Shown here piece after piece: positions 26,687 to 57,563 of a stretch of 64,000 nt of DNA. The translations under genes were made by a program, and so were the position numbers. Position 1 is the first letter of the stretch; each line of letters starts with the position of its first letter. The notes under the pieces are model-generated. The model searched no databases and had not been told where the DNA came from. It saw only the letters and a list, made by a program, of their open reading frames with translations. The stretch is taken from IMG/VR virus record IMGVR_UViG_3300020473_000013, positions 62,001-126,000 of that record. One strand, written 5' to 3'.

Positions 26687-27946
26687 TCAGTCATCCCAAT
26701 CGTCGTCGTCATCGTCGAGGGCAGGCTTCGACTTCTTCTTGCCCTTCTTCTTGGTACCGGAAGAGGAAGTCTTCTTCTTGGACTTCTTCTTGGGCGGTGC
26801 GTCGTCATCGTCATCGTCATCATCATCGTCGATGGCTGACTTGGCCTTCTTCTTGGCGGAGGAGGACTTCTTCTTCTTGGACTTGGCCTTCTTCTTGGGA
26901 GGCTCGTCATCATCCTCATCATCGTCGTCATCGTCATCATCGAACGACGGACGCTTCGGCTTGGACTTCTTGGATTTCTTCTTGGACTTGGCCTTCTTCT
27001 TGGGAGGCTCGTCATCATCGTCATCGCCGTCATCGTCGAGGTCGTCGTCATCGTCGAGGGCAGACGCTTTCTTGCCAGACTTCTTCTTGCCCTTCTTCTT
27101 CTTGGAAGAGGAACCGAGGTCGAGGCTGTCGTCGTCGAGGTCGTCGCCATCATCGTCGTCATCGACCTCATCGCCGCCGAAGACTTCCATGCGCTTGAAG
27201 TCCTCCTTGGCTTGCTCCTCACCCATGCGACCCGCCGCGTCGAGAAGCTCAGGATTCAGGTTCCAGACGAGGTACTCCTTCTCCTCATCGGTAAGCGGCG
27301 TACGGCCGTCGACCTTGTCAGCACTGTACTTATCGGTGCCAGCGGCCTTTGGCTTGAACTTAACGTTCACGTCCACGCCGTGCTTCGGGTGAGAAACGTC
27401 GAACGCCTTCTTCTCACCAGACTTCTTGCTCTTGACGATGTTGGTCTCGCCGAGCTCCTGCATACGAGCGACAAGGCTGTTGGTGAGGCGAACAACACGA
27501 ACGGGAGTCCACGACTTCGACTTCATTTCCTTGTAGCCGGTCTTCTTCTCCTTCTTGGTCGGCTCAGCCTTACGGGCTGGCTCGTCCTCCTGGATGTCGC
27601 GAATGATCGCGTTCACCAGATAGAAGTGCTCGTTCCGCATCGTTGCGTCCTGGCCGCCTTCGGTAGACAGGTCGCAGTACGGACAGTGAGCGTCGAGAGG
27701 CTCGTCCTCGTTCTCCGGGTTGAACGACACACAGAAGCGCGGGATGGTTACCAGCTTCTTCTCCTTGCCTGCCATGATCTTCACCCAGTGGCGACGAACC
27801 GGCAGGATATCGGAATCGAGGAAGCGAAGCTGCACCCACTCATCGGGATGGTCTTGGAACTTGAACAATTCGACAAGTTCCTCCAAGCGCAGGGAGTCAT
27901 TCTTCCCAGTCTTGGGTTTCATGTTGGAAAAGCCACGACGGGCCAT
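26687..27946 (-). CDS. Single-stranded DNA-binding protein (gp32-like) with long Asp/Lys-rich tail
   Basis: W..LRFL, C.....HCPYC zinc-site-like, NAIIR, PVRVVRL core; next to recA; acidic C-terminus DDDDDWDD. Confidence 0.65.
   Translation of the reverse strand: MARRGFSNMKPKTGKNDSLRLEELVELFKFQDHPDEWVQLRFLDSDILPVRRHWVKIMAGKEKKLVTIPRFCVSFNPENEDEPLDAHCPYCDLSTEGGQDATMRNEHFYLVNAIIRDIQEDEPARKAEPTKKEKKTGYKEMKSKSWTPVRVVRLTNSLVARMQELGETNIVKSKKSGEKKAFDVSHPKHGVDVNVKFKPKAAGTDKYSADKVDGRTPLTDEEKEYLVWNLNPELLDAAGRMGEEQAKEDFKRMEVFGGDEVDDDDDGDDLDDDSLDLGSSSKKKKGKKKSGKKASALDDDDDLDDDGDDDDDEPPKKKAKSKKKSKKSKPKRPSFDDDDDDDDEDDDEPPKKKAKSKKKKSSSAKKKAKSAIDDDDDDDDDDAPPKKKSKKKTSSSGTKKKGKKKSKPALDDDDDDWDD
26800..27150 (-). 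repeat. Low-complexity repeats encoding poly-D blocks alternating with PPKKKAKSKK
   Basis: Near-identical GACTTGGCCTTCTTCTTGGGAGGCTCGTCATC copies at about 26880 and 26985. Confidence 0.8.
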
Positions 27947-27984
27947 AGTGTTCTCCTCTATACAAACGATGCGCTAACACAATG

Positions 27985-27993
27985 TCTTTACAC
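27985..27993 (-). promoter_or_regulatory. Putative phage-specific promoter GTGTAAAGA
   Basis: Recurrent motif about 40 bp upstream of the SSB start. Confidence 0.5.
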
Positions 27994-29019
27994 TTTTGTC
28001 AGCTCAGGACATTCTTCCTGCGTCTGCTGGCGCATTCTGGAAAGTTCGTCTTGGGTAAAATGTTCGCCTATATCTAACACCAGTCGGGCGCACCCGTTGG
28101 TGTCAGCGTGTTTGGCTAAATACATTACTATATTTTCAGTCTCGCTCCTCTCGAAGTCTTCAAACACGTCAGCCTTACCTCCAATAACGCTGTGGAGGTT
28201 CTTGTTGCCGTCGTCCGTCACCATGTCGTCAAGGCTGACGCTGTAGTTCAGGAAGCCGGTATTCTTCTCGGCGATTTTCTTCCTGTGGGACTGCGGAATG
28301 GTATAGGCGATCCCGTATTCGTGCTCGGACGTTCCACACGTCTGGGCGTTGAGAACCCACCAGTTGATGTAGGAGGTCAAAGCGCCTTTGTTGCTGTCGT
28401 ACTTGTCGATAGCCAAGAGGATACTTTTCAGGATCGACTGGCGAACATCGTGGAAGTCGAAGTTGGACCCGTTAGCCTTGATGTAGATTTTGGCTTGGCG
28501 GGAAGACAGCTTAACGTAGTGGTCGAGCACCTTGGACCGAGATTCGTAAAACTTTTCGAGGTACGCTTCGCCGATCGTGACGATGCGATACAGGCCTTGT
28601 CGGTCCTTACAGCCTGCGAGGTGTGACTCCATGTCCAGCTCATGCTTTATCTGGAAGCGCGTATTCCCGCTGACCATAAGCATCTTGTGGTATCTGCTCA
28701 CGTAAGTGGAATGCTCGCGGAGGAACCTCGAAGCGAAGGCATGTAAGAACGAACGTTCCAACCGGGCCTCACGCAGCAGCCTGAATTTTTCCTCCCTGTT
28801 CTCGGATACTAGAAAGCAACAAAGAAGCTCGATAGTCCTGTCACGCGGAAGGGAACTAGGCTTCCTCTTACGATTGGCAGACACAAGGGCCAGTATATAA
28901 GACACCTGAACGTCGAAGGCATCCGTGTTCAGGATGATCGGCTCAAGTGCCTTATACAGAAAGAGGTCCAGCACTTGTTGTATCTGCTCACCTGTTAAAT
29001 TTTTGTCTGCAAGTGACAT
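27988..29019 (-). CDS. Phage-encoded sigma-70-family factor
   Basis: FHDVRQSILKSILLAIDKYDSNKGALTSYINWWVLNA matches sigma region 2 (DL.QEG..GL..AV.KFD...G..FSTYA.WWI); start moved to MSLADK. Confidence 0.75.
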   Translation of the reverse strand: MSLADKNLTGEQIQQVLDLFLYKALEPIILNTDAFDVQVSYILALVSANRKRKPSSLPRDRTIELLCCFLVSENREEKFRLLREARLERSFLHAFASRFLREHSTYVSRYHKMLMVSGNTRFQIKHELDMESHLAGCKDRQGLYRIVTIGEAYLEKFYESRSKVLDHYVKLSSRQAKIYIKANGSNFDFHDVRQSILKSILLAIDKYDSNKGALTSYINWWVLNAQTCGTSEHEYGIAYTIPQSHRKKIAEKNTGFLNYSVSLDDMVTDDGNKNLHSVIGGKADVFEDFERSETENIVMYLAKHADTNGCARLVLDIGEHFTQDELSRMRQQTQEECPELTKV

Positions 29020-29038
29020 GACACAACCTTGTGTTGGA

Positions 29039-29804: not shown

Positions 29805-30494
29805 CTATACGTCGTTCTTAATGAGGAACGTGGCGGCCGCCACGAGGTGTTTACATAAACCTGGAGCCAGGTCAGGGTTCATGACCACTGGAGGCTCCCC
29901 GTTACTGTACACGATACGGCTAGCACCGTGCGCGGCATTGGCATACTCGAAGGTGAATACGTAGGACTCGCAGTCACAAGATACGATCACCTTCTTGTGT
30001 TTGTTGATGGGCTTGTCGGCAGGGTTGCCTTCCTTGCCGATCTCGGCTCCGATGATGAAGGTCTTGTGCTTCCGGACGACTTTTGTAGGGCGCCACGGAT
30101 CATCGGTAATGGTGACAGCACGAAAAGCAGGCATACCTGAGCGTGTCTTGGTACGTTTCTTCTCCAGAAGTTCCACGTCCCGTGAGTTATTCACCATGAG
30201 GCGAGGTGTACCACGGACCAACTTGCGAAGCGTCATGCCCTTCTTGGATAGCTCGGTCTCCGGAAGCTGTTTCGGAGTCTTCGGGTTAAGTGCAGAGAGG
30301 CGATAAGAGTAAGGCTTACCTCCGAACTGCAACTTCTTAGGCTTGCTAGCCTTGCTGCCGACTCCCATGCCGCTGGAAGGCTTGCGTGCCTTCTTGCGCT
30401 TGGCTTCACCCTCTCGCTTGGCTTTACTTGCCTTACCGCTGGTGTTGCCGCGCGACACGGGGAGAGGCTTGTAGCCTTTCTTGCGCTTCTTCAT
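29805..30494 (-). CDS. SWIM zinc-finger protein
   Basis: VSCDCESY...PGLCKHLVAA (CxC-xn-CxH); basic N-terminus. Confidence 0.75.
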   Translation of the reverse strand: MKKRKKGYKPLPVSRGNTSGKASKAKREGEAKRKKARKPSSGMGVGSKASKPKKLQFGGKPYSYRLSALNPKTPKQLPETELSKKGMTLRKLVRGTPRLMVNNSRDVELLEKKRTKTRSGMPAFRAVTITDDPWRPTKVVRKHKTFIIGAEIGKEGNPADKPINKHKKVIVSCDCESYVFTFEYANAAHGASRIVYSNGEPPVVMNPDLAPGLCKHLVAAATFLIKNDV

Positions 30495-30558: not shown

Positions 30559-30828
30559 TTACATGTCCTCATCGTCGGTGTCATCATCATCATCATCATA
30601 ATCGTCGTCGTCGATGTCATCATGCGGGCCGCATCCAAGTCGATCGGGGTCTCCCTCCACAACGATCTTGTAGTTATCGTAGGAGACGAGGCGGCTTCCT
30701 TCTCCTGCGACGATAGACAAACCCTTCATGATGCGGGAGAATCGCTCAAGGTCGATACCCTCAAGATCGGCACCTTCGACCTGGAGGGTCAGGCGCATCT
30801 GCTTGGTGTTCTCAGTTTCGTGGCTCAT
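30559..30828 (-). CDS. Small acidic-tailed protein
   Basis: RBS AGGAG before MSHET; poly-D tail. Confidence 0.6.
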   Translation of the reverse strand: MSHETENTKQMRLTLQVEGADLEGIDLERFSRIMKGLSIVAGEGSRLVSYDNYKIVVEGDPDRLGCGPHDDIDDDDYDDDDDDTDDEDM

Positions 30829-31714
30829 GGATTCGCTCCTCATTCACTGATACGATCTTGTCGAATACTTCTTCCTGATTTGAGTCGAGCCACACGTAGG
30901 GCTCCAGACCCATGGACTCGTTCTCTTTCTCATAGTACCACTCCAGAGGAACCTGCTTTTTATGCGGAGTGCGACCGGTCACCGCTGTCGTCACCCAATA
31001 CCATCCGGGCTTGCGGTGAGTGCGCAGGAAGCAACGAGAATCAGGACCTGGCTGAGAGACGGACACATACGAGGTGAGGAACTTGGGCGCCATCTCGCTA
31101 TATAGTGCTTTGGCTCCCTCCTTACCTAAGAACAACTGGAACATAGAGAGCGAGTGCGGCTCACACTTGAATACCACAGCAGGGCCTTCCCCATAGACAG
31201 GATCGACAGTCTCGATGATTGCGCTGTCGCTGAGGAACTTGGCGCCGAGTTTCTCCAGAACATGGGAAACAGGGTAAGGCTCAGACGAGATTGCGTTCTG
31301 GAGAAGCGTCAGAACCACGGCGACTTCCTGTATAGTCAGGTGCCGGTCTTGACTAGGGTGAGGATACGTTGTGGTATATCCCCAGATATGCAAAGCATAC
31401 CCGTACTGGGGAAGACTGTGCAGAGGAATCATACCTGCTTTCACTGCACGGTCTCGCTCCTGCTCGGAGAGTGCGTTCTCCTTCGCATTCTTTACACCAT
31501 CCAATGTTACAGGATAGTGCATTCCAGCAGGACGAGGCTCCATCCTGGCCAAGTGGTTCTTTATACCACGAGTGATTTCCTCAAGCTCCTTTGCGCCTTC
31601 CTCTGTAGCGGTAAGGTCTTTGTGTCCTGTATGGAACACCAGGCCCGGGACCTTCTTGCGAAGTTTGCGCACGGCGCCTGATGTTGTGATGAACTTGTCG
31701 GGATAGACGATCAT
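30812..31714 (-). CDS. Hypothetical protein
   Basis: 300 aa ORF, somewhat lower GC than neighbours. Confidence 0.65.
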   Translation of the reverse strand: MIVYPDKFITTSGAVRKLRKKVPGLVFHTGHKDLTATEEGAKELEEITRGIKNHLARMEPRPAGMHYPVTLDGVKNAKENALSEQERDRAVKAGMIPLHSLPQYGYALHIWGYTTTYPHPSQDRHLTIQEVAVVLTLLQNAISSEPYPVSHVLEKLGAKFLSDSAIIETVDPVYGEGPAVVFKCEPHSLSMFQLFLGKEGAKALYSEMAPKFLTSYVSVSQPGPDSRCFLRTHRKPGWYWVTTAVTGRTPHKKQVPLEWYYEKENESMGLEPYVWLDSNQEEVFDKIVSVNEERIHEPRN

Positions 31715-31715: not shown

Positions 31716-32177
31716 CTATGTCCTTACCAAGTTAGGGAATTGTTCCATAAGTTCTTCTCGGATTTCCATGAGGATGATACCGAGCCAGTTCTTACCTTTA
31801 CCTCGACAGACTCCCCAGAACGTGTCGTTCCACGTATTACCCTCGACGAGGCGGGCAGGATACGTAGCGATCAGGCGGTGAATCAGGGCCGGGTTCTGTA
31901 AGAACTTTTGGCGCACGATGTTCCGCATGATCTTGACCTTCACCTTCTCCCAATCAGGTCGTAACTGAACAGCGTTCCCTACCTCCTTTGCTTCGCGAGC
32001 CTTGCGTAAGGCGGCTATCATCTGCTTCTCTGCACGCGACCGTGTCTTGGCTGCTTGGAAGGCATGCTCGACCGTCATGTATCTGACACCACGGCGCTCG
32101 ATCAGACTGAAGGAGAAGTTGCTAAGGAAGGCATACTGTCCTCGAAAGTCGTCGATCACTTTCTGGGGATCATACAT
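31716..32177 (-). CDS. NADAR (YbiA-like) family hydrolase
   Basis: YAFLSNF, Y.TVEHAFQAAK, LRPDWEKVK..IM...V.QKF.QN, LVEGN.WNDTFWG....G.NWLG.ILMEIR; start MYDPQK. Confidence 0.9.
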   Translation of the reverse strand: MYDPQKVIDDFRGQYAFLSNFSFSLIERRGVRYMTVEHAFQAAKTRSRAEKQMIAALRKAREAKEVGNAVQLRPDWEKVKVKIMRNIVRQKFLQNPALIHRLIATYPARLVEGNTWNDTFWGVCRGKGKNWLGIILMEIREELMEQFPNLVRT

Positions 32178-35381: not shown

Positions 35382-35933
35382 TTACAGCTCGTCGTCGAAG
35401 TCGTCGAAGTCGTCAGCGCTCTTGGCAGACTTGCCCTTCTTGCCGCCTTTCTTGCCGCCTTTGGCATCGGCCTTGGCAGCGGCTTTCTTGCCGGCTTTCT
35501 TGCCCTTACCCTTCTTGGCAGGAGCTTCTTCTTCGGCAGCGGCCTTCTTGCCTTTGCCTTTGCCCTTGCCTTTCTTGCCCTTGGCAGGAGCTTCTTCTTC
35601 GGCAGCGGCCTTCTTGCCTTTGCCCTTGCCTTTCTTGCCCTTGGCAGGAGCTTCTTCTTCGGCAGCGGCTTTCTTGCCCTTGGCAGCACCCTTCTTGCCG
35701 CCTGCAGCCTTGCCGCCTTTGGCAGCGCCCTTGCCCTTGGCCGGTGCGGCTTCACCGTCGGTGCCGTTCTCGACGACTTCGATCTGAGCGGTCACGGCTT
35801 CGATCTGCTCGTCGATCTTGGTGGCGCCGGTCTCGATGGACTTCTTGGTGGCTTCGAGAGCCTTGAGCTGCTTCTTCAGGCGAGCGGCTTCACCACGTTG
35901 CGGCAGTTCGATAGTCTTTGCGGCCATTGTCAT
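35382..35933 (-). CDS. Histone H1-like Lys/Ala/Gly-rich protein with acidic tip
   Basis: N-terminal coiled coil, KKAAAEEEAPAKGKKGKG repeats, ends DDFDDFDDEL. Confidence 0.75.
   Translation of the reverse strand: MTMAAKTIELPQRGEAARLKKQLKALEATKKSIETGATKIDEQIEAVTAQIEVVENGTDGEAAPAKGKGAAKGGKAAGGKKGAAKGKKAAAEEEAPAKGKKGKGKGKKAAAEEEAPAKGKKGKGKGKGKKAAAEEEAPAKKGKGKKAGKKAAAKADAKGGKKGGKKGKSAKSADDFDDFDDEL
35510..35690 (-). repeat. Three tandem 60-66 bp repeats
   Basis: GGCAGGAGCTTCTTCTTCGGCAGCGGC unit at about 35517, 35583 and 35643. Confidence 0.85.
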
Positions 35934-36131: not shown

Positions 36132-36524
36132 TTAGTCGTCCCAGTCGTCGTCATCGTCATCGTCCTCGTCCTCGTCCTCATCGTCCTCGTCGTCGTCCTC
36201 TTCATCATCGTCGTCGTCGGAGTCGTCGTCGTCCTCGTCGTCGTCGTCGTCGTCGTCGTCGTCCTCGTCGTCGTCGTCGTCCTCGTCATCATCGTCGTCG
36301 TCGGAGTCGGAATCATCATCCTCGTCCTCGTCGTCCTCGTCGTCCTCGTCGTCCTCGTCTTCGTCGTCCTCCGGCTCCTCATCCTCACCGGACTTCTCAC
36401 TCACGAGGTCGATCAGCGTTTCGAGGGTGTGGTTCTTCTCCTGAGCCTCGACCAGGAAGGTCAGGAAAGCAGTGCCGAAAAGGGCTTCGAGGTCGAGGGG
36501 TTGCGGCTTCTTGGACTTGGCCAT
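36132..36524 (-). CDS. Extremely acidic protein (C-terminal ~80 aa nearly all D/E)
   Basis: Start MAKSKK (RBS AGGA); ends DDDDDDDWDD. Confidence 0.75.
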   Translation of the reverse strand: MAKSKKPQPLDLEALFGTAFLTFLVEAQEKNHTLETLIDLVSEKSGEDEEPEDDEDEDDEDDEDDEDEDDDSDSDDDDDDEDDDDDEDDDDDDDDDEDDDDSDDDDDEEDDDEDDEDEDEDDDDDDDWDD

Positions 36525-36627
36525 TACTGTATATCCTTTCGGTTGTTGCGTAGTGAGGTTGGGGGTGTTGCTAACAGTCGTCTCGTTGCGACTGCTCAAT
36601 CTTTACACTTTCACGAAACTGCTGGCG

Positions 36628-37335
36628 TCAGAGGTCTTCGTCGTCGAGGTCTTCGTCGTCTTCGTCCTCGTCCTCGTCCTCCTCATCTTCATCTTCATCT
36701 TCGTCTTCATCCTCGTCGTCCTCATCCTCATCGGAATCGTCGTCGAGGTCCTCATCTTCGTCCTCGTCCTCGTCCTCGTCTTCGTCGTCGAAGTCCTCAT
36801 CTTCCTCGTCATCGACAGGAGCGGGAGCAGGCTTGGACTTCTTACCCTTCTTACCCTTGGCCGGCTTGGCGGCGCGCTGAGCCTTGTCGTCCTCATCGGC
36901 GAAGACTTCGATCTTGATGGCATCGTTCGGATAAATGCAGGTGATCTCGCCAGTGACGTAATCCTTGATCTTGAGGACGCCGGTTTGAGCATCGCGCTTG
37001 ATGAAGCCTTTGAGGCTGTACATCAGGTCGTCGCGCAGCACGGTGACACTGGAAGGTTCGCCCGGGCGGCCGAATACCTTAACCACGTCGCGAACCATGA
37101 AAGTGCTGAGGCGAGTCTTCTTGGAGCCGTTCGTTTTCTTGTGGCGGAAAACGACGCCGGATTCATCTTGGCTGACCAGAAAGCCATTGAGCGTGACAGG
37201 TACGCGGCTGGCGTAAACATTGACAACGTGCACCGCTTGATCAACCGCCATACCAACGCCAGGCTTGATACCGCGCAGACGACGATTGATCTTGTCGGTC
37301 TGCGACAGGCGTTTGTTGGTCTTCGGCTTGGCCAT
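36628..37335 (-). CDS. Hypothetical protein, basic beta-rich core plus poly-D/E tail
   Basis: RBS GGAG; CTGTAAAGA at 37376-37384. Confidence 0.75.
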   Translation of the reverse strand: MAKPKTNKRLSQTDKINRRLRGIKPGVGMAVDQAVHVVNVYASRVPVTLNGFLVSQDESGVVFRHKKTNGSKKTRLSTFMVRDVVKVFGRPGEPSSVTVLRDDLMYSLKGFIKRDAQTGVLKIKDYVTGEITCIYPNDAIKIEVFADEDDKAQRAAKPAKGKKGKKSKPAPAPVDDEEDEDFDDEDEDEDEDEDEDLDDDSDEDEDDEDEDEDEDEDEEDEDEDEDDEDLDDEDL

Positions 37336-37448
37336 TTGTATCTCCAGATAAAATGCTGCCCGATGTTCTGAGCAATCTTTACAGTTTCAGAGCTGTCTAG
37401 GTGCGGGGCGGCAGAATAACTACCGCCCGTGCTACCCGTTATTTACAG

Positions 37449-38639
37449 TTACAGGAGGAGCAGTGCGTCGCCGCCGTTGGTCAGGAGCATACGCTCGGCA
37501 TCCTGAGCGGTGTTGCCTGCCGGGAACAGGCGATAGAGGTCGTGGCCCAGATCAGTCGCACACTTGCGCAGGTAGGTACCAGACACGATCACCGCTTCAC
37601 TCTCCTCAGTGGCGAAGCTCTGGAAGACGTTCAGGAGCGATTCGTCCAGAATGTCCTCGGTGTTGAAAGCCAGAGACAGGCGGAAGTCGTCGTCACCAAG
37701 GCCGGCTTCGCGGGCGTAGTTGTTGACGATCTTCTGCATAGAGGACAGAGGCTTGAGCATGGACTGCGCGTTGGCCAAGATCGGCATGTTGACATTGACA
37801 GCCACGGTCGGACGCAGGATCACGGTACCATCCTCGCTGTCGGTGTCATACACCGGCCATGTCACCACAGAGAAAGACTGTTCTGCGGGAACAGTGACGA
37901 CGTGAGAGGTCGGACCAGAAACATCGTTCTCGGTTACGCCGATGTCGTCGATGTTCTCGTCCTCGTCAGCTTCTTCCTCCTCTTCCTCTTCCTCTTCAGG
38001 GGCGGAAACGAATGAGAACTTCGGACGGTGCGGGTCATCGAAGACGCCGTACATCAGCTCACGGGCGCGACCGTCGAGGTAGGACATCAGCTCGTTGACG
38101 CGATCCTCGATGCCATCCGCAGGACCGAACAGCATGGCTTCGTCACGGCTGTGACCGACGAAGGATGCCAAGTCGGCGAGACCCGAGCGAAGCAGGCCAT
38201 ACGGGTTGCGCTCGCTGCCGTTACCTTTACGCATCGGGCTTGCGACACTGTAGTGGGAGCCGTTGATTTCCACCACTTCCGGTACGCCGTCGGCGAGAGA
38301 AGGAGTGACGTTCAGCATGATGCGCGGCTCGATGCGAAGACGGACGGCGCCACTACCTGCGAGAAGTTCGCCGAACGTGGGAGCCAGCTCGTTCTCCTCG
38401 ATGGTCTCGTCCTGCTCCTCGGTATCTTCGGACGGCTCATCGTCTTCGACTTCCGGATCGTCAGAAGCGATGGGCTCCTCGCCCATGTCTTCGTCACCCA
38501 TGTCTTGCACGTCTTCGATGTTGGCTTCGGGCTCGCTGGCTTCGTTCTCGCCAACGACGTTACCCTTCTGGACGGTCTGATCGTCGGCTTCGCCGATGAT
38601 GTCGCGAGCAGAACGCGATTCGTGTTCACGATTGGACAT
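37449..38639 (-). CDS. Acidic hypothetical protein
   Basis: Start MSNREH (RBS GGAG/AAGGAA). Confidence 0.7.
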   Translation of the reverse strand: MSNREHESRSARDIIGEADDQTVQKGNVVGENEASEPEANIEDVQDMGDEDMGEEPIASDDPEVEDDEPSEDTEEQDETIEENELAPTFGELLAGSGAVRLRIEPRIMLNVTPSLADGVPEVVEINGSHYSVASPMRKGNGSERNPYGLLRSGLADLASFVGHSRDEAMLFGPADGIEDRVNELMSYLDGRARELMYGVFDDPHRPKFSFVSAPEEEEEEEEEADEDENIDDIGVTENDVSGPTSHVVTVPAEQSFSVVTWPVYDTDSEDGTVILRPTVAVNVNMPILANAQSMLKPLSSMQKIVNNYAREAGLGDDDFRLSLAFNTEDILDESLLNVFQSFATEESEAVIVSGTYLRKCATDLGHDLYRLFPAGNTAQDAERMLLTNGGDALLLL

Positions 38640-40744: not shown

Positions 40745-41260
40745 TTATACCAGTGCAGCGTCCTTGAGCTTCTTCATAGGACGAACCTTGATCTTGGTGG
40801 TGGCGGGCTTCGGCTTGGTGACGATCTCCTTGCCAAAGGACATCTTCGTTTCGCCGCCTTTCTTGGCCGGAATGTGCTTGGTCACGACCTTGAGCAGTCC
40901 CGGAATCATGAACTCGCCGAGACCCTTCTTGCGGATGGACGCGAGCATGGTAGTCTCCAGAGCTTCCATGACCTTCTTGACATCCTTCTTGTCGAGTTCG
41001 GTCTCGTCAGCCAGATGCTGGATGAGCTGAGTCTTGGTCAGCTTCTCCTTCATCGGCTTCGGCAGGTGAGAGGTATCCGGCTTGGCCGCCTTGCCTTTCT
41101 TCGTGCTACCCTTCTTCGCGGAAGCCTTGGCTTTGGTAGCCTTGGTAGCCTTCGAGGCCTTCTTCTCAGACGCCTTGGTCTTGGCAGTCTTCTTGGTGGT
41201 CTTCACGTCCTCGTCCTTCTTGGAACGAGTCTTCTTGGTCTTGGTGGTCTTGGTAGCCAT
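40745..41260 (-). CDS. HU/IHF-family DNA-binding protein with Lys/Thr/Ala-rich N-terminal extension
   Basis: LTKTQLIQHLAD.TEL.KKDV..V..AL.......I......F.IPGL.K......PA..G.......I..K.KPA...IK.RP.K.LKDA. Confidence 0.88.
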   Translation of the reverse strand: MATKTTKTKKTRSKKDEDVKTTKKTAKTKASEKKASKATKATKAKASAKKGSTKKGKAAKPDTSHLPKPMKEKLTKTQLIQHLADETELDKKDVKKVMEALETTMLASIRKKGLGEFMIPGLLKVVTKHIPAKKGGETKMSFGKEIVTKPKPATTKIKVRPMKKLKDAALV

Positions 41261-41304: not shown

Positions 41305-41313
41305 TATTTACAG
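41305..41313 (-). promoter_or_regulatory. Putative phage-specific promoter CTGTAAATA
   Basis: Recurrent motif 45 bp upstream of the HU start. Confidence 0.55.
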
Positions 41314-41769: not shown

Positions 41770-43323
41770 TCAGAGTTCGTCGTCGAAGTCGTCGAAGTCG
41801 TCGTCCTCTTCATCTTCCTCAGAGTCCTCGTCCTCGTCGTCCTCGTCGTCCTCTTCATCTTCCTCAGAGTCATCGTCATCCTCTTCGGAATCGTCGTCCT
41901 CGTCATCCTCCTCAGAGTCATCGTCGTCCTCTTCGGTGTCTTCGAGGTCGTCTTCGTCGTCCTCTTCCTCGTCGAAGTCTTCCTCCTCATCGTCGTCGGA
42001 GTCGTCTTCTTCGGAATCGTCGTCCTCTTCCTCGTCGTCGAAGTCTTCCTCGTCCTCGCCTTCATCACCTTCATCGCTGTCGGCGTCTTCGGGCTCCGGC
42101 TCCTCGTCGTCGAGAATCTCCATGCGGACGACCTTGGCAACGGACACCAGCTTCACGGACTCGCTGTCTGTCAGGTAAAGCATAATCTTGGACTTAGCGT
42201 CGGAGAAGCCGATGACAATAGCTTCCTCTCCCTCGTAGTCCAGCTTGGTGCCGATCTCCACTTCGTCCCCGAGCTTGGGCTCGATGACGGACTCAAAGTT
42301 TGCATCCCAGGCCGCGGTGATTTTCTCCAGCTTGGAATCGCTAACGACGCTTTCGTCCACGAAGTTGCGCAGCATGTCGATGCGAGTCTCGCCACTCGAA
42401 CCCTTGTCGGAGGAGGTGGCCTTCTGCTCGGCGTCCTCCATGTCGGCAGCGTAAGCCTCGATGTCCTCATCGGAAGCGTTAGTCGGGAGCAGGCCGATCT
42501 GCATAGTCAGGCGCTCGTCATTGAACACACCGCCAACGCAAGCTACGGTGAAGTTGTGCCCAGTAGACTTGCGAATGAAGTCGGACACATGCTCACCCAG
42601 AGCAGCCTCGACGGAGCGCGCCAGCTCCTCAGTGATGGACTTGACCGGCTTGGCTTTCACGCTGCCAGATTTCTTGGTCGACTTCTTGCTCTTGGCCGGA
42701 GCTTCTTCCTTCTGAGCAGCAGCCTTCTTACCGCGGCGCGGGACCTTGCTACCTTTCTCGCTAGCGTCTTCGCTGGACTTCTTACCGCGACGCTGACGCT
42801 TCGGCTTGGCTTCTTCCTGCTCAGCCTTCTTGGAGCTGGACTTCTTGGAGCTGGCAGACTTTCCGGTGCTCTTGCCTGTAGACTTCTTACCGGAAGTCTT
42901 CTTGGTGCCTTTCTTGCCGATGTTGTCGACCATCTCGCGGAGTTCGTCGATGCCTACGCCTTTGGCATCGGCACGGACCCGGAAGACTTCGGCGTTGACC
43001 AGTTCAGATACGAGTTCACGACGGCCCATGTTAGCGCTGTTGGTTGCTTTCTTTGCCACGGTGGATGTTCCTTTTTCAGATTGCTTGGAAGTGTTGGACC
43101 CGCGCTTGCGAGTAGTGGAGCTGGTCTTCGGGGTTGCGCCGCTGCCGTCGCCGTCGAGTTCGACGAGGCCGCGTCCCTTCTTACCGATGTTGCTGGGTTT
43201 GATCTTGGTGCCGCCTTCCGTCTTGTAACCAGTCTTCATCACCTTGACGATACGCTCTTTGGTACCGTCCAGGAGGGTGATGCGCTTGCCTTCGAAGGTC
43301 GGGTCGGTTTTGGTGACAGCCAT
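41770..43323 (-). CDS. Large charge-segregated protein (Lys/Ser-rich half, folded middle, poly-D/E tail)
   Basis: RBS AGGAG; ends DDFDDFDDEL; preceded by a promoter cassette. Confidence 0.8.
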   Translation of the reverse strand: MAVTKTDPTFEGKRITLLDGTKERIVKVMKTGYKTEGGTKIKPSNIGKKGRGLVELDGDGSGATPKTSSTTRKRGSNTSKQSEKGTSTVAKKATNSANMGRRELVSELVNAEVFRVRADAKGVGIDELREMVDNIGKKGTKKTSGKKSTGKSTGKSASSKKSSSKKAEQEEAKPKRQRRGKKSSEDASEKGSKVPRRGKKAAAQKEEAPAKSKKSTKKSGSVKAKPVKSITEELARSVEAALGEHVSDFIRKSTGHNFTVACVGGVFNDERLTMQIGLLPTNASDEDIEAYAADMEDAEQKATSSDKGSSGETRIDMLRNFVDESVVSDSKLEKITAAWDANFESVIEPKLGDEVEIGTKLDYEGEEAIVIGFSDAKSKIMLYLTDSESVKLVSVAKVVRMEILDDEEPEPEDADSDEGDEGEDEEDFDDEEEDDDSEEDDSDDDEEEDFDEEEDDEDDLEDTEEDDDDSEEDDEDDDSEEDDDDSEEDEEDDEDDEDEDSEEDEEDDDFDDFDDEL

Positions 43324-53783: not shown

Positions 53784-54850
53784 TATCCGGCCTCCAACTT
53801 AAAGTCACTTTTATTTACAGAGTTCTTCAATTCTTTCAGGGTCATCCAAGAAGCGACACCCTTCATACGATTGGTTCTGTCAGGCAGTACCTGTAAATTG
53901 CAAGGGTGCACCATAAAGCGGACGGGAATCACGGAAGGTCTGCGTTCGTACTCCATAGTATCGCGGTTCAGCCTAAAGTAGGCATCATGAACACTAACTA
54001 TGTGGTCGATGGACTCTCCGGGTCCTACATTAAGCACATGGGCGTAATGCGCAGGAAACCTCTTCATAGCGGAACGGGTCACCGTACTTATCAACCGGCG
54101 GTATTCCTTATACGTAAGGAGCGATGGGTCCAGGCTCAACTTATACGTCCAGGATTGCCGCGCGGCGTTTCTGTTCTGATTCACCTCACACGTTCTTCCC
54201 TTCGCTCGATTATCCTCTAGTAGGCTTACGGCTTCTTCGTGTGTACGAACACGGACACCATTAGCTCGGAGAAAATCTTTTAACGCACCTGAAGTTATGC
54301 GCATGTGAGGAAATTTTTTCCGAATGCCGTCAACGATATAAGAGGCGCTTCGCTTATCCTCGACGTACATACGACAGATGGAACTCTTGTTCCTGCGCAA
54401 AAAGGCTTGCTTCACCTGAGAACGCGACATCAAAGGAGTGCCGGCTCGATTACATGCAGTCTTAAAAGCCCAAACGCACATGTCGGTCGAATGTTTATGA
54501 GCTAGGCGTGAAGCCATTTTACCAGGGGAGACGAGCTTCTTATTCCATTCGATAATGGTGTCGCGCTCAGAAACAACGATGTCTATATGAGAGGCAGCCT
54601 TTTTCTTTTTACTGCGCATTAGATCGAAGTGGTGGAGGAGCTTTTGGAGGCTCCCGTGAGGTATTCCTGTCTCATTGGACAGTTCCCGCATGTTCAACCC
54701 CTTCACTTGGTAAAGGGATTTGAGCCAGTCGCGTATCTGAGGCGTGGGTTTGATTTGCCACTTACCGTTTTTCCGCTTTACGTAGGTGACGCCATCGACA
54801 AACTTTTCAGTCCCTGTTTTGGCGTCTTCTTTTATGTGTGTGTATCGCAC
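53783..54850 (-). CDS. Free-standing HNH homing endonuclease with N-terminal HTH-like repeats
   Basis: C-terminal ESIDHIVS...HPCNLQVL....NRMKG; HTH-like SLYQVKGLNMRELSNETGIPHGSLQKLL; atypical composition. Confidence 0.75.
   Translation of the reverse strand: MRYTHIKEDAKTGTEKFVDGVTYVKRKNGKWQIKPTPQIRDWLKSLYQVKGLNMRELSNETGIPHGSLQKLLHHFDLMRSKKKKAASHIDIVVSERDTIIEWNKKLVSPGKMASRLAHKHSTDMCVWAFKTACNRAGTPLMSRSQVKQAFLRRNKSSICRMYVEDKRSASYIVDGIRKKFPHMRITSGALKDFLRANGVRVRTHEEAVSLLEDNRAKGRTCEVNQNRNAARQSWTYKLSLDPSLLTYKEYRRLISTVTRSAMKRFPAHYAHVLNVGPGESIDHIVSVHDAYFRLNRDTMEYERRPSVIPVRFMVHPCNLQVLPDRTNRMKGVASWMTLKELKNSVNKSDFKLEAG
53812..53820 (-). promoter_or_regulatory. Putative phage-specific promoter CTGTAAATA inside the HNH gene 3' end
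   Basis: 29 bp upstream of the gyrB ATG. Confidence 0.55.
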
Positions 54851-55018: not shown

Positions 55019-55077
55019 GATCGTGTAGCCTGTGTTGGAGGTATCAGTGACTATTTACACAATACCTTCTCGGTACA

Positions 55078-55106
55078 ATAAACAAAGACGGGGGCCGGAG
55101 CCCCCA
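55078..55106 (-). terminator. Rho-independent terminator
   Basis: GGGGGC-TCCG-GCCCCC then GTCTTTGTTT. Confidence 0.65.
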
Positions 55107-55112
55107 TCGGAT

Positions 55113-55427: not shown

Positions 55428-55491
55428 CTTGTAGATCGTGTTGGAAGTCGGAGATAAAGATGGAGGGCCCGAAGACCCTCCCTGCCGTCAG

Positions 55492-55863
55492 TTACTCGCA
55501 GTACGTCTTGAGAAGTTCGACGAAGTTGGCGAGCGTTTCGTCAGGCAAGCCTCTCTGGTCATAAGCGTTGAACCATTGCTCAGCCAGCTCGCCAAACTTT
55601 TTGTTGACGACTTCCTCAGATTCCTCGTCCAGAATGAACGGGTCGATCGAGGTGCCCGTCTGCTTTGCAATGTCAGGGAAGATCACATCCTCCACAAACT
55701 CTCGGATGAAGCGGTACGCGGCTTTGGGCGCTTCGCCCGTGCAGATGATCTTACTATCCGAAAGGGCCAGCGCGATGATGGCCGGTTCTTTGTAGGCATC
55801 CCCTTCGAGCAGGGCGAACAGATTTTCTCGGGTAGCAAACTTTTGATTAGGGAAACGCGGCAT
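55492..55863 (-). CDS. Hypothetical protein
   Basis: Start moved to MPRFPN (RBS AAGGA) downstream of a cassette. Confidence 0.6.
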   Translation of the reverse strand: MPRFPNQKFATRENLFALLEGDAYKEPAIIALALSDSKIICTGEAPKAAYRFIREFVEDVIFPDIAKQTGTSIDPFILDEESEEVVNKKFGELAEQWFNAYDQRGLPDETLANFVELLKTYCE

Positions 55864-55909
55864 GATGTGATTCCTTACAGTGAGCGCGATTGCGCTAGTT
55901 GAATGATGG

Positions 55910-55984
55910 CGAACGTTATCAATCTCCGTCACCACATTGTCGAACGCTCGTTTCGGATCGCTAGCGTTCATCTTCATTATATCA
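55910..55984 (-). promoter_or_regulatory. Promoter/leader cassette: TGaTATAAT, 41 bp, TGGTGACGG-N7-TAACGTTCG
   Basis: Read directly. Confidence 0.75.
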
Positions 55985-56021
55985 CACCACGGCACGGCGA
56001 ACAAGGTAGGTCTCTATCTGG

Positions 56022-56606
56022 TCACCGCTCGATGTCGAACGTCTCACCAGCGTATGCTGCGTAGGATGCAAACTTTGCCAGATTGAGTTGCGCCAGCAGA
56101 TCGGTCAGCTTTACCCAGTTCCCCTCAGAACCGCCTATAACGATGTCTGCTAACCAGCGACCGTACTTACCGCTTCCGTTCTTACGGGTTAGAAGGATGA
56201 CCTCGCGATCCGTCAGGAGTGTCCGAACAAACCGTGAGGCCATAACACCGTGAGCTTCCTCGGCAGAGTTCTCTGCTCGCCACGTCGGCTCTGGAGTGTC
56301 GAAAGCCAGTAAGCGGAACGTCACGTTGACCGTCACGTTGAAGCCCAACTCGACGGCAGCCTCAAAGGTATCGCCGTCGATCACCCGTGTGACCTCAGCG
56401 CGGTAGATATAAAGTTGGTCTGTATCGAAGCTAAGAGTATCGCTGATCCTGCTGAACTCCAGCTCACTGGACTCGTACCACATATTGAGAATCTGGTCGC
56501 GAGTATAGGAGGTGGAGCACTGCCCGCACGTCTGAGTGTCGGCGGGCAGCGGGAACCAAGCGATGTCCTCTCCGCAGTTGGCACAGGGAGATTTCATCTT
56601 GTCCAT
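56022..56606 (-). CDS. Thermonuclease (SNase-like) with N-terminal zinc ribbon
   Basis: YRAEVTRVIDGDT, RLLAFDTPE, GKYGRWLADI; CxxC...CxxC N-terminus. Confidence 0.85.
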   Translation of the reverse strand: MDKMKSPCANCGEDIAWFPLPADTQTCGQCSTSYTRDQILNMWYESSELEFSRISDTLSFDTDQLYIYRAEVTRVIDGDTFEAAVELGFNVTVNVTFRLLAFDTPEPTWRAENSAEEAHGVMASRFVRTLLTDREVILLTRKNGSGKYGRWLADIVIGGSEGNWVKLTDLLAQLNLAKFASYAAYAGETFDIER

Positions 56607-56630
56607 AGGTTATGCCTTTATGGAATAGGA

Positions 56631-57059
56631 TTAGCGGACGTTCTGAGCCTGATCCGTCAGGAACTTCCGCACGTTATCCACGTACTTGGCGGAGGTGCTG
56701 GGAAGGTGGGCAACCTTGAGGAAAGTCTTGACGTGGCGATCCTCGATGGGGACGTCCAAGCCTACGGTGCCTTCCTCACTCCAGACGACTTTCTGGAAAC
56801 GTTTCCAGATAACGTCGCGGAAGAAGCGTTGGACAGCCTCTTGGAATTTCTTGTTCTTCTCCAGGACTTGGTAGCTGCGGCCCACAAAGTCGAGAAGGTC
56901 GGGAGCCCGTTTCGGCTCCAGAGTGTTTGCAGCCATGTCCAGCAGAAGCTCGCGATCATCGACGGATGAACACTGAGCGATGAAGTCAGGAAGTTGGTCG
57001 GGATTCCTGCTGGCCTGAATGTGGTGGGTTTTCGCGTTGGGGTCGATCTTGATTTCCAT
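56631..57059 (-). CDS. Hypothetical protein
   Basis: ORF in operon. Confidence 0.65.
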   Translation of the reverse strand: MEIKIDPNAKTHHIQASRNPDQLPDFIAQCSSVDDRELLLDMAANTLEPKRAPDLLDFVGRSYQVLEKNKKFQEAVQRFFRDVIWKRFQKVVWSEEGTVGLDVPIEDRHVKTFLKVAHLPSTSAKYVDNVRKFLTDQAQNVR

Positions 57060-57083
57060 TACAGAAGTCCTTGTCAGGATGGG

Positions 57084-57563
57084 TTAGGAGTCGTCTTCAT
57101 CGGAGTCAGCATCGGCGTCATCATCGGCGTCTGCGTCATCGCCAGAAGACTCATCATCGGAATCAGGGTCGGCATCATCGCCGTCACCATCATCGGAATC
57201 ATCAGAGGCATCATCGGTGCCAGTATCGGAGCCATCGTCATCACCTTCGTCTGAGGCATTGTCGTCAGAATCATCGCCGCCGTCTTCGGAGGAATCTTCA
57301 TCAGAACTATCCTCGTCCGAGGAGTCATCGGACGAGTCTTCGCTGTCCTCAGAATCGCCGTCGTCCGAGGAGTCTTTCTTGGCCTTTTTCTTGGCCTTTT
57401 CTTCCTTCTCCTTGCGCTCCTCCTCCCGTTCTTCCTTCTTCTCCTCTTCCTCTTCCGCATCGGAAGGCTGAGTCTGAGGGACGGTGCCTTGGTCCATGAA
57501 ACCATAAAAGCTGGCGAGAGCCTTATCGCTATCACTCACCATGGTTAGATCAATCTCGATCAT
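57084..57563 (-). CDS. Acidic D/S/E-rich low-complexity protein
   Basis: RBS GGAGG; E/K block followed by a long D/S tail. Confidence 0.65.
   Translation of the reverse strand: MIEIDLTMVSDSDKALASFYGFMDQGTVPQTQPSDAEEEEEKKEEREEERKEKEEKAKKKAKKDSSDDGDSEDSEDSSDDSSDEDSSDEDSSEDGGDDSDDNASDEGDDDGSDTGTDDASDDSDDGDGDDADPDSDDESSGDDADADDDADADSDEDDS

What the first reader, a model, noticed from the sequence alone, without database searches (positions are those of the whole stretch)
26687..57563. Suite of charge-segregated disordered proteins with shared acidic-aromatic C-terminal motifs
Seen: at least seven genes encode long poly-D/E tracts, often paired with Lys-rich blocks (26687..27946, 30559..30828, 35382..35933, 36132..36524, 36628..37335, 41770..43323, 57084..57563; also acidic 37449..38639). 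Two otherwise different proteins end in the identical DDFDDFDDEL (35382 and 41770). The SSB and the 36132 protein both end in DDDDDDWDD. Established: SSB C-terminal acidic-aromatic tails are docking motifs, and blocky-charge IDRs drive condensates and histone-chaperone or DNA-mimic activity. Inference: a network of scaffolds that builds a phage replication compartment or nucleoid without a protein shell, or mimics that jam host DNA-binding defence proteins. No chimallin or PhuZ is recognisable in this window.
Basis: partly seen in the sequence, partly recalled or inferred. Interest (0 to 1): 0.7.

Follow-up and report, generated by a model that had tools for sequence, protein, structure and literature searches.

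The report
Acid-tailed DNA proteins of a jumbo phage
A marine jumbo phage related to Pseudomonas phage PaBG carries, in its replication gene block, a conserved and transcribed set of proteins with long disordered lysine-rich and aspartate/glutamate-rich tails that end in short conserved acidic-plus-aromatic tips like those that single-strand-DNA-binding proteins use to dock partners; whether they build a compartment is untested.

Summary
The window is bases 62001-126000 of a complete 224,853-bp marine jumbo phage of the PaBG/Lu11 group. Its minus-strand replication block holds the most charge-segregated proteins of the genome (kappa ranks 1-4, 6 and 8 of 218), and the two pairs of identical C-termini exist as described.

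The 'SSB' has a T4 gp32-type core with a 160-residue disordered tail of alternating acidic and Lys blocks. Of 97 homologues, 58 end in an acidic-aromatic tip. Some carry the canonical bacterial SSB tip DDIPF at that same position, so the tip is a docking motif.

A gene cassette p396-p235-p130-p183 keeps its order in 20 or more phage genomes, including the distant Alexandravirus-type. The tips are conserved while the tracts vary by tandem repeats. p183 has [FY]xxF in 15 of 18 sequences, with 37 aromatic residues in the tips and none in 2,095 other IDR residues. p517 ends FDDFDDEL in 7 of 8. p130 keeps one W or F inside poly-D/E.

Marine metatranscriptomes suggest transcription.

Best reading: basic, probably DNA-binding proteins with self-inhibiting, DNA-like acidic tails and shared docking tips, as in gp32, gp2.5 and SSB. 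The condensate and DNA-mimic ideas are neither shown nor excluded. p94, p159 and p217 have no homologues in relatives or were not traced. I rate it a new variant of a known kind.

The parts
26687..27946 (-). gp32-type single-strand DNA-binding protein (419 aa). Core is residues ~20-255. A 160-residue disordered tail of alternating poly-D and Lys blocks ends DDDDDDWDD.
   Evidence: phrog_15004, E 2.9e-132. AF2 pLDDT is above 90 for the core and about 50 for the tail. Foldseek top six hits are all gp32 (2a1k E 1.2e-5, 1gpc 1.5e-4). The tail contains 105-nt tandem repeats. Tips of 97 homologues are.
35382..35933 (-). p183: N-terminal coiled coil, then three ~20-aa Lys/Gly/Ala-rich repeats (net +20), then the tip DDFDDFDDEL.
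   Evidence: phrog_36478. 60-66-nt tandem repeats. [FY]xxF tip in 15 of 18 homologues. In-frame 9-nt indel variant in run X2.
36132..36524 (-). p130: ~45-aa helical N-domain, then ~85 residues of almost pure D/E (net about -80), with a single W three residues from the end.
   Evidence: Kappa 0.75, rank 1. Homologues keep a W or F near the end in our subclade, the PaBG subclade and Alexandravirus-type phages, but not in the Lu11 subclade.
36628..37335 (-). p235: all-beta N-domain (~150 aa), a Lys-rich linker, then an acidic tail with an internal EDF motif and a terminal ...DLDDEDL.
   Evidence: phrog_22271. AF2 model pLDDT 78.9. Only weak small-barrel (Sm/SH3/WYL) matches, Z about 5. 70 cluster representatives in 1.8 billion proteins, many ending in a Lys-rich stretch plus a short acidic tip with terminal L/F/M/Y/W.
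37449..38639 (-). p396: acidic, mostly globular protein with internal poly-E loops. It is the first gene of the conserved cassette.
   Evidence: Positional homologues lie directly upstream of p235 in every relative examined. No family match.
41770..43323 (-). p517: small beta N-domain, Lys/Ser-rich IDRs, central and Tudor/SH3-like domains, then a ~105-residue acidic tail ending DDFDDFDDEL.
   Evidence: Homologues P0012-P0015, L014 and L063 end FDDFD(D/E)(E/A)L. In PaBG, Lu11 and HRDY3 the acidic tract is internal. 45-48-nt tandem repeats. Weak Tudor/SH3-like structural look-alikes.
40745..41260 (-). HU-type DNA-binding domain fused to a ~70-residue Lys/Thr/Ala-rich (H1-like) N-terminal extension, net +32.
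   Evidence: PF00216, E 3.9e-11, above the cut-off. Relatives carry the Lys-rich extension at either the N- or the C-terminus.
24659..26164 (-). RecA-like recombinase ending SDDDDDE.
   Evidence: PF00154, E 2.4e-22. An acidic ...DDE/DEE end is present in nearly all of the 46 related loci.
13344..14717 (-). DnaB-like helicase with an acidic tail ending DDYALS.
   Evidence: 52% identical to the PaBG replicative helicase. Tails: PaBG GDYALA, Lu11 and HRDY3 GPAALS.
30559..30843 (-). p94: small ORF with a poly-D tail containing one Y. Lineage-specific.
   Evidence: No acid-tailed homologue in 46 related loci.
57084..57563 (-). p159: almost wholly disordered, with an E/K-rich segment followed by a Ser/Asp-rich segment (net -60). 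No charge segregation.
   Evidence: Acidic ORFs in the same position next to the exonuclease and primase in NCTB and AD1. Homology was not tested.
22436..23089 (-). p217: acidic ORF ending DEENF. Lineage-specific.
27985..27993 (-). Promoter-like motif GTGTAAAGA, 47 nt upstream of the SSB start.
   Evidence: Same core as the annotated Lu11 'middle/late promoter' CTGTAAAT.
36600..36608 (-). Promoter-like motif GTGTAAAGA upstream of p130.
37376..37384 (-). Promoter-like motif CTGTAAAGA, 49 nt upstream of p235. A second copy lies at 37440-37448.
41305..41313 (-). Promoter-like motif CTGTAAATA, 53 nt upstream of the HU fusion.

Best explanation
These are replication- and recombination-module proteins of a PaBG/Lu11-type jumbo phage, all built on one plan: a folded or coiled-coil head, a Lys-rich disordered segment, and an acidic segment with a short hydrophobic 'tip'.

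What is shown:
- The heads include a gp32-type SSB, an HU fold, an uncharacterised beta domain and a coiled coil.
- The tips are conserved: W in SSB and p130, F-x-x-F-x-x-x-L in p183 and p517, and a terminal L in p235.
- The charged tracts between head and tip evolve fast, by tandem duplication.
- The cassette p396-p235-p130-p183 keeps its gene order across the wider phage group.
- The genes carry a shared promoter-like motif. Uneven depth in marine RNA libraries suggests that they are transcribed.

What is inferred, by analogy with T4 gp32, T7 gp2.5/gp4 and bacterial SSB:
- The Lys-rich segments bind DNA.
- The acidic tract acts as a tethered DNA-like polyanion. It folds back on the protein's own basic or DNA-binding surface, which lowers and tunes DNA affinity.
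- The hydrophobic tip inserts into a pocket on partner proteins of the replisome or recombination machinery. Proteins with the same tip would then share, or compete for, the same partner.
- p130 is a head plus a bare polyanion plus a tip, and is always encoded next to the Lys-rich p183. It is most likely a soluble competitor or chaperone for the Lys-rich proteins and for the tip pocket.
For: - gp32 fold of the SSB core and a disordered tail.
- At the same C-terminal position, family members carry DDIPF/DDVPF (the bacterial SSB tip), [SA]WDDD[DE], D6WD[DE] or DDDDDEW. 58 of 97 end acidic plus aromatic.
- Tip conservation with synonymous codon turnover.
- Aromatic residues are confined to the tips: p183 37/216 against 0/2095; p517 16/96 against 10/295.
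- p517 ends FDDFDDEL in 7 of 8.
- The p235 family (70 representatives) often ends in a Lys-rich stretch followed by 3-6 acidic residues and a terminal L/F/M/Y/W.
- Cassette order is conserved in PaBG, Lu11, HRDY3, IMG/VR and ENA/Logan relatives and in AD1-type phages.
- The genes are embedded among RecA, sigma factor, HU, 5'-3' exonuclease, topoisomerase II, helicase and primase genes.
- A shared promoter-like motif lies upstream of SSB, p130, p235, p396 and HU.
- RNA libraries show uneven depth, 13 to 459 in run X4, with p183, p235 and p396 at or above the SSB. A DNA run is flat at 26-28.
- Precedent: the gp32 docking helix ...DDLDAFNVDDF uses L262 and F265, and the far-C-terminal acidic part is proposed to occupy the ssDNA site (PMC11551737). 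The T7 gp2.5 acidic tail binds a basic patch of the polymerase (PMC12339929).
Against: - No partner has been identified.
- The only complex prediction (SSB core with the p130 tail) gave no verdict.
- The AF2 model of the full SSB shows no docked tip.
- The N-domains of p235, p396, p517 and p130 match no characterised family, so DNA binding by them is assumed from composition and context.
- p130 lacks any aromatic residue in the Lu11/HRDY3 subclade. p235 ends in lysines there, and p517 has no tip in PaBG or Lu11. The tips are therefore not indispensable across the group.
- Depth from Logan contigs is a poor measure of expression.
Confidence: 0.45

Rival explanations
1. The blocky polyampholytes (SSB, p183, p517, p235, the HU fusion) and the polyanion p130 co-condense with DNA into a shell-less replication factory. 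The tips supply specific 'sticker' contacts.
For: - Extreme charge segregation and a high fraction of charged residues.
- Multivalency. A distant p130 homologue carries about a dozen D-D-F repeats (L068), and the SSB tail is built of repeated acidic/Lys units.
- Depth in marine RNA libraries at or above that of the SSB gene (a poor measure of expression).
- The genome has no tubulin or multisubunit RNAP hallmarks of nucleus-forming phages.
- E. coli SSB itself phase-separates through its tail and tip (PMC7584906, listed).
- This reading is compatible with, and would build on, the best explanation.
Against: - There are no data on localisation or phase behaviour for any PaBG-type phage in the searched literature.
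- Charge patterning predicts a propensity, not a function.
- Relatives of the Lu11 subclade have much shorter acidic parts in p235 and p183, so hypertrophied blocks are not a group-wide requirement.
Confidence: 0.2
2. The acidic proteins, above all p130 and also p159 and p94, are DNA mimics or polyanion sponges. They would titrate host DNA-binding proteins such as nucleoid proteins, restriction enzymes or other defence nucleases, as Ocr and Arn do.
For: - Net charges of -60 to -80 on small proteins.
- The genes have their own promoter-like motifs.
- Acidic DNA mimics are an established phage strategy (general knowledge, not tested here).
Against: - Known DNA mimics are folded proteins that position carboxylates like phosphates. 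p130 is an unstructured homopolymer-like tract with a conserved aromatic tip.
- The genes sit in a replication cassette that is syntenic across the group, not in variable accessory islands.
- There is no hit to any anti-defence family in Pfam or PHROGs.
Confidence: 0.1
3. The long charged tracts are largely neutral products of repeat expansion in tolerant disordered regions. Only the short tips, or nothing, are functional, and the 'suite' is a compositional habit of this lineage.
For: - Tandem DNA repeats underlie all the tracts.
- Near-identical strains differ in length: P0011 has 515 aa against 517, P0017 has 418 against 419, there is a 9-nt indel in run X2, and run X1 holds repeat-number variants of the SSB tail.
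- The position of the tract varies: it is internal in PaBG p517 and terminal here.
- Lineage-specific acidic ORFs p94 and p217.
Against: - The composition is kept as acidic and Lys blocks over deep divergence. All 97 SSB homologues have Lys-rich tail windows, and nearly all have acidic ones.
- The codons are mixed GAC/GAT/GAA/GAG rather than pure slippage repeats.
- Tips and cassette order are conserved.
Confidence: 0.15
4. They are packaged internal proteins or counter-ions that travel with the DNA in the capsid.
For: - The shared promoter-like motif also precedes many late, plus-strand genes.
- Lys-rich proteins could neutralise packaged DNA.
Against: - The genes lie among replication genes.
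- The PaBG virion proteome text names gp80, 81, 191, 213 and 215 among 14 proteins, and none of gp124-131 (its Table 1 was not available).
- Polyanions would be disfavoured inside a DNA-filled head.
Confidence: 0.05

Closest known systems
T4/RB69 gp32 (gene 32 protein)
   Same: The predicted core fold matches (Foldseek prob 1.00, TM by target 0.55-0.59). It shares a basic N-terminus and a conserved CPYC segment that I take, from memory of gp32's zinc site, to be the same feature. The C-terminal region is acidic with hydrophobic docking residues. gp32 uses L262 and F265 in ...DDLDAFNVDDF to bind Dda.
   Different: Sequence identity is only 13-16%, and there is no HMM hit to PDB sequences. The tail is about 160 residues of alternating poly-D and poly-K blocks, against about 50 mainly acidic or Ser-rich residues in gp32. 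The tip is a single W in an Asp run, or DDIPF in some homologues.
Bacterial SSB disordered linker plus C-terminal tip (DDDIPF)
   Same: A disordered linker is followed by an acidic tip ending in hydrophobic residues that dock many partners. Some members of this phage SSB family end in exactly DDIPF. EcSSB condenses through its tail (PMC7584906).
   Different: The core is a monomeric gp32-type fold, not the homotetrameric bacterial OB fold. This phage uses WDD, not IPF.
T7 gp2.5 and gp4 acidic C-terminal tails
   Same: Different replication proteins of one phage carry similar acidic tails with a terminal aromatic residue. These contact basic patches of the polymerase and compete with ssDNA. That gp4 shares the patch is from my own knowledge.
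   Different: The core folds are unrelated. Here the tip is shared by proteins of unknown function, not only by SSB and helicase, and the tails are five to ten times longer.
HMGB1-type acidic-tail autoinhibition, and prothymosin-alpha with histone H1
   Same: A DNA-binding basic region is combined in cis or in trans with a poly-D/E tract. The p130/p183 pairing of a polyanion with a Lys-rich H1-like protein resembles a chaperone-client pair (own knowledge; analogy only).
   Different: There is no homology. The setting is bacterial-virus, and the conserved aromatic tips are not a feature of those systems.
Phage DNA-mimic proteins (Ocr, Arn, ArdA)
   Same: Small and very acidic.
   Different: Those are folded mimics of B-form DNA with no homopolymeric tracts and no conserved terminal motif. 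No sequence or family match was found here.

Membership tests
gp32-type SSB (T4-like gene 32 protein) | OB-fold core with the gp32 topology | tested here: met
   AF2 core pLDDT is above 90. The six best Foldseek PDB hits are all gp32 (E 1.2e-5 to 5.7e-3), followed by a sharp drop.
gp32-type SSB (T4-like gene 32 protein) | Zinc-binding subdomain (His/Cys ligands) | tested here: inconclusive
   A conserved C88-P-Y-C segment with an upstream Cys/His is visible in alignment A3. The ligand geometry was not checked.
gp32-type SSB (T4-like gene 32 protein) | Acidic C-terminal domain that mediates partner binding | tested here: inconclusive
   An acidic, disordered tail with a conserved tip is present. 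Binding was not testable, and the complex job gave no verdict.
gp32-type SSB (T4-like gene 32 protein) | Cooperative ssDNA binding | not testable with these tools
   Needs biochemistry.
Bacterial SSB-Ct tip motif (D-D-D-I-P-F) | C-terminal acidic run ending in I/L/V-P-F | tested here: not met
   The window's SSB ends DDDDDDWDD. Homologues P0050, P0058, P0063, P0066, P0068, P0083, P0091, P0096, P0098 and P0103 do end in DDIPF or DDVPF. The position is equivalent but the motif here differs.
HU/IHF (Bac_DNA_binding) | PF00216 domain above the gathering score | tested here: met
   40745-41260: 43.5 bits against a cut-off of 22.4.
Nucleus-forming jumbo phages (Chimalliviridae) | PhuZ tubulin and multisubunit RNA polymerases | tested here: not met
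   No PF00091 and no PF00562 match in the complete genome. The nearest relatives are Baikalvirus PaBG and Lu11. Chimallin itself was not searched with a model.
Folded DNA-mimic anti-restriction proteins (Ocr/ArdA/Arn) | Recognisable family domain or a folded acidic surface | tested here: not met
   No Pfam or PHROG match for p130, p94 or p159. Their tracts are near-homopolymeric D/E.
Phase-separating scaffold (operational class) | Demixing in vitro or foci in vivo | not testable with these tools
   Only sequence propensity was measured (kappa 0.36-0.75).

The most novel reading that the evidence does not exclude
PaBG/Lu11-type jumbo phages, which lack a chimallin shell, organise their replicating DNA in a polyelectrolyte coacervate. 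A hyper-extended gp32 tail, Lys-rich H1-like and HU-fusion DNA coats and a free polyanion (p130) would set the phase behaviour. Two or three classes of acidic-aromatic tips (W, FxxFxxxL, terminal L) would act as address labels that admit or exclude replisome and host factors. Exchange of the SSB tip between DDIPF and W types would mark switches between host and phage partner networks.
Probability: 0.15. Interest if true: 0.8.

Novelty: new variant of a known kind. Interest (0 to 1): 0.55.

Why it matters
Acidic tails with hydrophobic tips are the classic way in which SSBs of bacteria, T4 and T7 recruit partners. Three things here go beyond that picture:

- The same kind of tip is spread over several unrelated, uncharacterised proteins of one conserved cassette.
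- A gp32-type SSB family swaps between the bacterial DDIPF tip and phage-specific W tips.
- There is a 'free tail' protein made of a small head, a polyanion and a tip.

If the tips share a partner, this defines a new interaction hub in a widespread group of marine, Pseudomonas, Erwinia and Dickeya jumbo phages whose replication biology is almost unstudied. It would also give a tractable test of whether charge-blocky IDRs organise phage DNA without a protein shell. PaBG and Lu11 are culturable, which makes the test practical.

Tried and rejected
- **Near-identity DNA search:** megablast of 20 kb against the phage collection gave no match.
- **Family scans:** Pfam and PHROG scans of the acidic proteins and ten neighbours gave only HU, RecA, a weak sigma region 2 and function-unknown PHROGs. 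The CDC45, TBCA, Presenilin and similar hits are low-complexity artefacts below the cut-offs.
- **SSB core against PDB sequences:** nothing found, either as a single sequence or as an 8-sequence profile.
- **p235 N-domain fold:** Foldseek against PDB and AFDB clusters gave TM at or below 0.27. VIA-align gave Z at or below 5.6 to Sm/SH3/WYL/BirA-C barrels, which is below the level that means more than a common arrangement. No fold is assigned.
- **ESM Atlas look-ups:** for p517 only weak Tudor/SH3-like rows (TM below 0.5); for p396 nothing.
- **Complex prediction:** SSB core (1-262) with the last 40 residues of p130 scored 0.00, with no verdict. This is not evidence either way.
- **p130 as a copy of the SSB tail:** I considered this, and the idea that the cassette exists only where the SSB has a W tip. 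Rejected, because AD1-type and other relatives with Lys-ended SSBs still have the cassette and a W/F-tipped p130.
- **Recent duplication as the source of the identical p183/p517 tips:** the flanks are unrelated and the last two codons differ synonymously. However, both genes share genome-specific synonymous codons in ours and in L014, which hints at short-patch gene conversion. This is unresolved.
- **PaBG paper:** it says nothing about these genes.

Full report
**1. What the sequence is**

The window is bases 62001-126000 of a complete 224,853-bp virus record with direct terminal repeats. G+C is 55%. A codon-usage-based gene call gives 218 genes in two large strand blocks.

No near-identical phage is in the annotated collection. 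Protein searches place it with Pseudomonas phage PaBG:
- topoisomerase II large subunit: 71% identical to PaBG;
- SSB core: 59% identical to PaBG;
- further relatives: Lu11, HRDY3, phage NCTB and the Erwinia/Dickeya Alexandravirus-type phages.

Gene order from topoisomerase through SSB, RecA and helicase to terminase is the same as in PaBG, Lu11 and HRDY3.

Public runs that hold the stretch are almost all labelled marine metagenome or metatranscriptome. The genome has no tubulin and no RNA-polymerase beta match. It encodes a sigma-70-like factor next to the SSB, as described for PaBG (PMC7412058).

**2. Check of the observation**

- Across the genome, 11 of 218 proteins have a 20-residue window with at least 60% D/E. 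Eight of them are in this block.
- Charge segregation is extreme: p130, p235, p517 and SSB hold kappa ranks 1-4 (0.75, 0.59, 0.46, 0.45; genome median 0.19). p94 ranks 6 and p183 ranks 8. z-scores against shuffled charges reach 12-18.
- p159 is acidic but not segregated.
- RecA, the DnaB-like helicase and a clamp-loader-like protein also end in acidic tails.

**3. The SSB**

With an alignment of 95 homologues, AlphaFold2 gives pLDDT above 90 for residues ~20-255 and about 50 for residues 260-419.

Foldseek's six best PDB hits are all RB69 or T4 gp32: 2a1k at E 1.2e-5, 1gpc at 1.5e-4, and the gp32-Dda complex 8gme. The next hit is far worse. Sequence-only searches of the PDB find nothing.

The tail is built from 105-nt tandem units, each encoding an Asp block and a Lys block.

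The tails of 97 homologues are the most informative result:
- All 97 have Lys-rich tail windows and nearly all have acidic ones.
- 58 end in an acidic run with an aromatic residue.
- Tip types include [SA]WDDD[DE], D6WD[DE] and DDDDDEW.
- About ten end in DDIPF, DDVPF or DEPF, which is the canonical bacterial SSB docking tip.
- 23 end in lysines, as in the Alexandravirus-type phages.

A position that can hold the bacterial SSB tip is a docking position.

**4. The conserved cassette**

Immediately upstream in transcription order lie p396, p235, p130 and p183 (37449-38639, 36628-37335, 36132-36524, 35382-35933). The HU fusion (40745-41260) and p517 (41770-43323) lie a few kb further upstream.

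The same order, p396-like then p235-like then p130-like then p183-like, is found in:
- PaBG (gp127-124), Lu11 and HRDY3;
- IMG/VR relatives;
- ENA and Logan contigs;
- three more distant genomes, including Dickeya phage AD1, where it sits at a different genomic location.

The p235 N-domain family has 70 cluster representatives among 1.8 billion proteins.

**5. Tips against tracts**

The charged tracts vary in length, sequence and even position:
- The acidic tract of p517 is internal in PaBG, Lu11 and HRDY3 and terminal here.
- Near-identical strains differ by in-frame indels.
- All tracts are tandem-repeat DNA.

The tips are conserved:

| Protein | Tip | Conservation |
|---|---|---|
| p183 | [FY]xxF in the last 12 residues | 15 of 18 distinct sequences. 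37 aromatic residues in 216 tip positions, none in 2,095 other IDR positions |
| p517 | FDDFD(D/E)(E/A)L | 7 of 8 |
| p130 | one W or one F near the end of an otherwise pure D/E tract | W in six genomes of our subclade plus L017, L069 and L072. F in the PaBG subclade, AD1 and L068. No aromatic in the Lu11/HRDY3 subclade |
| p235 | terminal L | 13 of 25. An internal EEDF motif is also common. The wider family often ends in a Lys-rich stretch, 3-6 acidic residues and a terminal L/F/M/Y/W |

Between relatives, the tip codons differ synonymously (GAC/GAT, TTC/TTT, CTG/CTA/TTA) while the peptide stays the same. This points to selection on the peptide.

F, F and L in DDFDDFDDEL are spaced i, i+3, i+7, which is one face of a helix. 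The Dda-binding helix of T4 gp32 (...DDLDAFNVDDF) uses A255, V258, L262 and F265 in the same way (PMC11551737).

**6. Expression**

A promoter-like motif [CG]TGTAAA[GT]A lies 30-60 nt upstream of SSB, p235 (two copies), p396, the HU fusion, topoisomerase, primase and many late genes. It lies 84 nt upstream of the p130 start. There are 36 hits against about 20 in shuffles, mostly intergenic. The motif has the core of the annotated Lu11 'middle/late promoter'.

Four marine metatranscriptome runs hold the cluster at 99% identity or more.
- Their contig depth is uneven. In run X4: p183 459, p235/p396 333, SSB 217-328, the sigma gene 13-138, and part of the 506-aa gene 0-90.
- A DNA run is flat at 26-28.

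This pattern suggests transcripts rather than carried-over DNA. The cassette's depth is at or above that of the SSB gene. Depth from assembled contigs is only a rough guide.

**7. What the heads are**

- HU is certain.
- p183 has a ~55-residue coiled-coil head and an H1-like Lys/Ala/Gly repeat region.
- p130 has a ~45-residue helical head.
- The p235 head is an all-beta domain (pLDDT 78.9) with only weak small-barrel resemblances.
- p517 has small beta domains and a possible helix-extension-helix motif, seen by eye only, with weak Tudor/SH3-like look-alikes.
- p396 matches nothing.

DNA binding is therefore inferred from the Lys-rich segments, the HU fold and the genomic setting. It is not shown.

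**8. Mechanism, with what is shown and what is inferred**

Shown:
- a gp32-type SSB;
- disordered polyampholyte tails;
- conserved acidic-hydrophobic tips, shared between unrelated proteins;
- a conserved cassette in the replication module.

Also, the genes share a promoter-like motif, and RNA-library depth suggests that they are transcribed.

Inferred, by analogy with gp32, T7 gp2.5 and bacterial SSB:
- The acidic tract is a tethered DNA-like competitor for the protein's own basic or DNA-binding surface.
- The tip docks in a pocket of a partner. Proteins with equal tips would then share or compete for partners.
- p130, a polyanion with a tip that is always encoded next to the Lys-rich p183, acts in trans as competitor or chaperone.

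I put this at about 0.45.

L068's p130 homologue has about a dozen DDF repeats. Nothing here tests the model, and I give it about 0.2. The DNA-mimic or defence-jamming reading gets about 0.1. Mostly neutral repeat expansion with functional tips only gets about 0.15. Packaging gets about 0.05.

**9. Limits**

- The partner is unknown.
- The single complex prediction gave no verdict and counts for nothing.
- Tip statistics use related sequences, so the p-values overstate independence.
- Tips are absent in some subclades.
- Chimallin itself was not searched with a model.
- p94 and p217 have no homologues with acidic tails in relatives. p159 has only positional counterparts. These three should not be counted in the conserved system.

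**10. Novelty**

I found no description of this cassette or of the tip classes in the PaBG paper or in searches on jumbo-phage condensates. The principle, acidic tail plus hydrophobic tip, is textbook for SSBs.

What appears new:
- the spread of this principle over a conserved set of uncharacterised proteins;
- the free-tail protein p130;
- the exchange of DDIPF and W tips within one gp32-type family.

I rate it a new variant of a known kind, with interest 0.55.

Noticed in passing
window 35382-35420 and 41770-41808; L014:11702-11740 and L014:6017-6055: Within each genome, the FDDFDD tips of p183 and p517 use the same synonymous codons: GAC GAC TTC GAC GAC TTC here, and GAC GAC TTC GAT GAT TTT in both genes of L014. 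This suggests short-patch gene conversion between two genes 6 kb apart. L063 does not show it.
   Followed up: partly
whole genome; in the window e.g. 27985-27993, 36600-36608, 37376-37384, 41305-41313, 58663-58679: A promoter-like motif [CG]TGTAAA[GT]A lies 30-60 nt upstream of many middle and late genes on both strands (36 hits against about 20 in shuffles). It has the same core as Lu11's annotated middle/late promoter, and is presumably read with the phage sigma factor at 27988-29034.
   Followed up: partly
homologues P0050, P0058, P0063, P0066, P0068, P0083, P0091, P0096, P0098, P0103; loci L040, L061: Some gp32-type SSBs of this jumbo-phage family end in the bacterial SSB tip DDIPF or DDVPF. 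This implies recruitment of host SSB-interacting proteins. Others use W tips or Lys-rich ends.
   Followed up: partly
genome 183675-185069, 192834-194789, 198019-198561 (outside the window, plus strand): Three more strongly acidic proteins lie in the late gene block. One is 651 aa with net charge -126 and repeated CPVC motifs. They may be scaffold or processed head proteins.
   Followed up: no
L062:18019-18357: In a close relative, a 112-aa gene between SSB and RecA has a weak Acb2_Tad1_hairpin (anti-CBASS/Thoeris sponge) Pfam hit. The window has no ORF of that kind between 26197 and 26687.
   Followed up: no
L043-L054, L052 (Alexandravirus-type loci); L018: RecA-like genes of several relatives are 840-1190 aa, against about 500 aa here. 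This suggests intein or other insertions.
   Followed up: no
window 35678 (run X2) and 26717-27011 (runs X1-X4): There is natural length polymorphism in the repeats: a 9-nt in-frame insertion in the p183 Lys-rich repeat, and alternative joints within the SSB tail repeats.
   Followed up: partly
window 29805-30494 and 31716-32100: By eye, a Lys-rich protein has a SWIM-like CxC...CxH motif, and another ORF has a YbiA/NADAR-like motif. PaBG annotates an N-glycosidase of this kind elsewhere. Pfam gave no hit for the first, and the second was not scanned.
   Followed up: no
window 53783-54850: A 355-aa ORF lies directly downstream of the topoisomerase II large-subunit gene and has no counterpart in the PaBG gene order. 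It looks like an inserted mobile (homing-endonuclease-like) gene. This was not tested.
   Followed up: no
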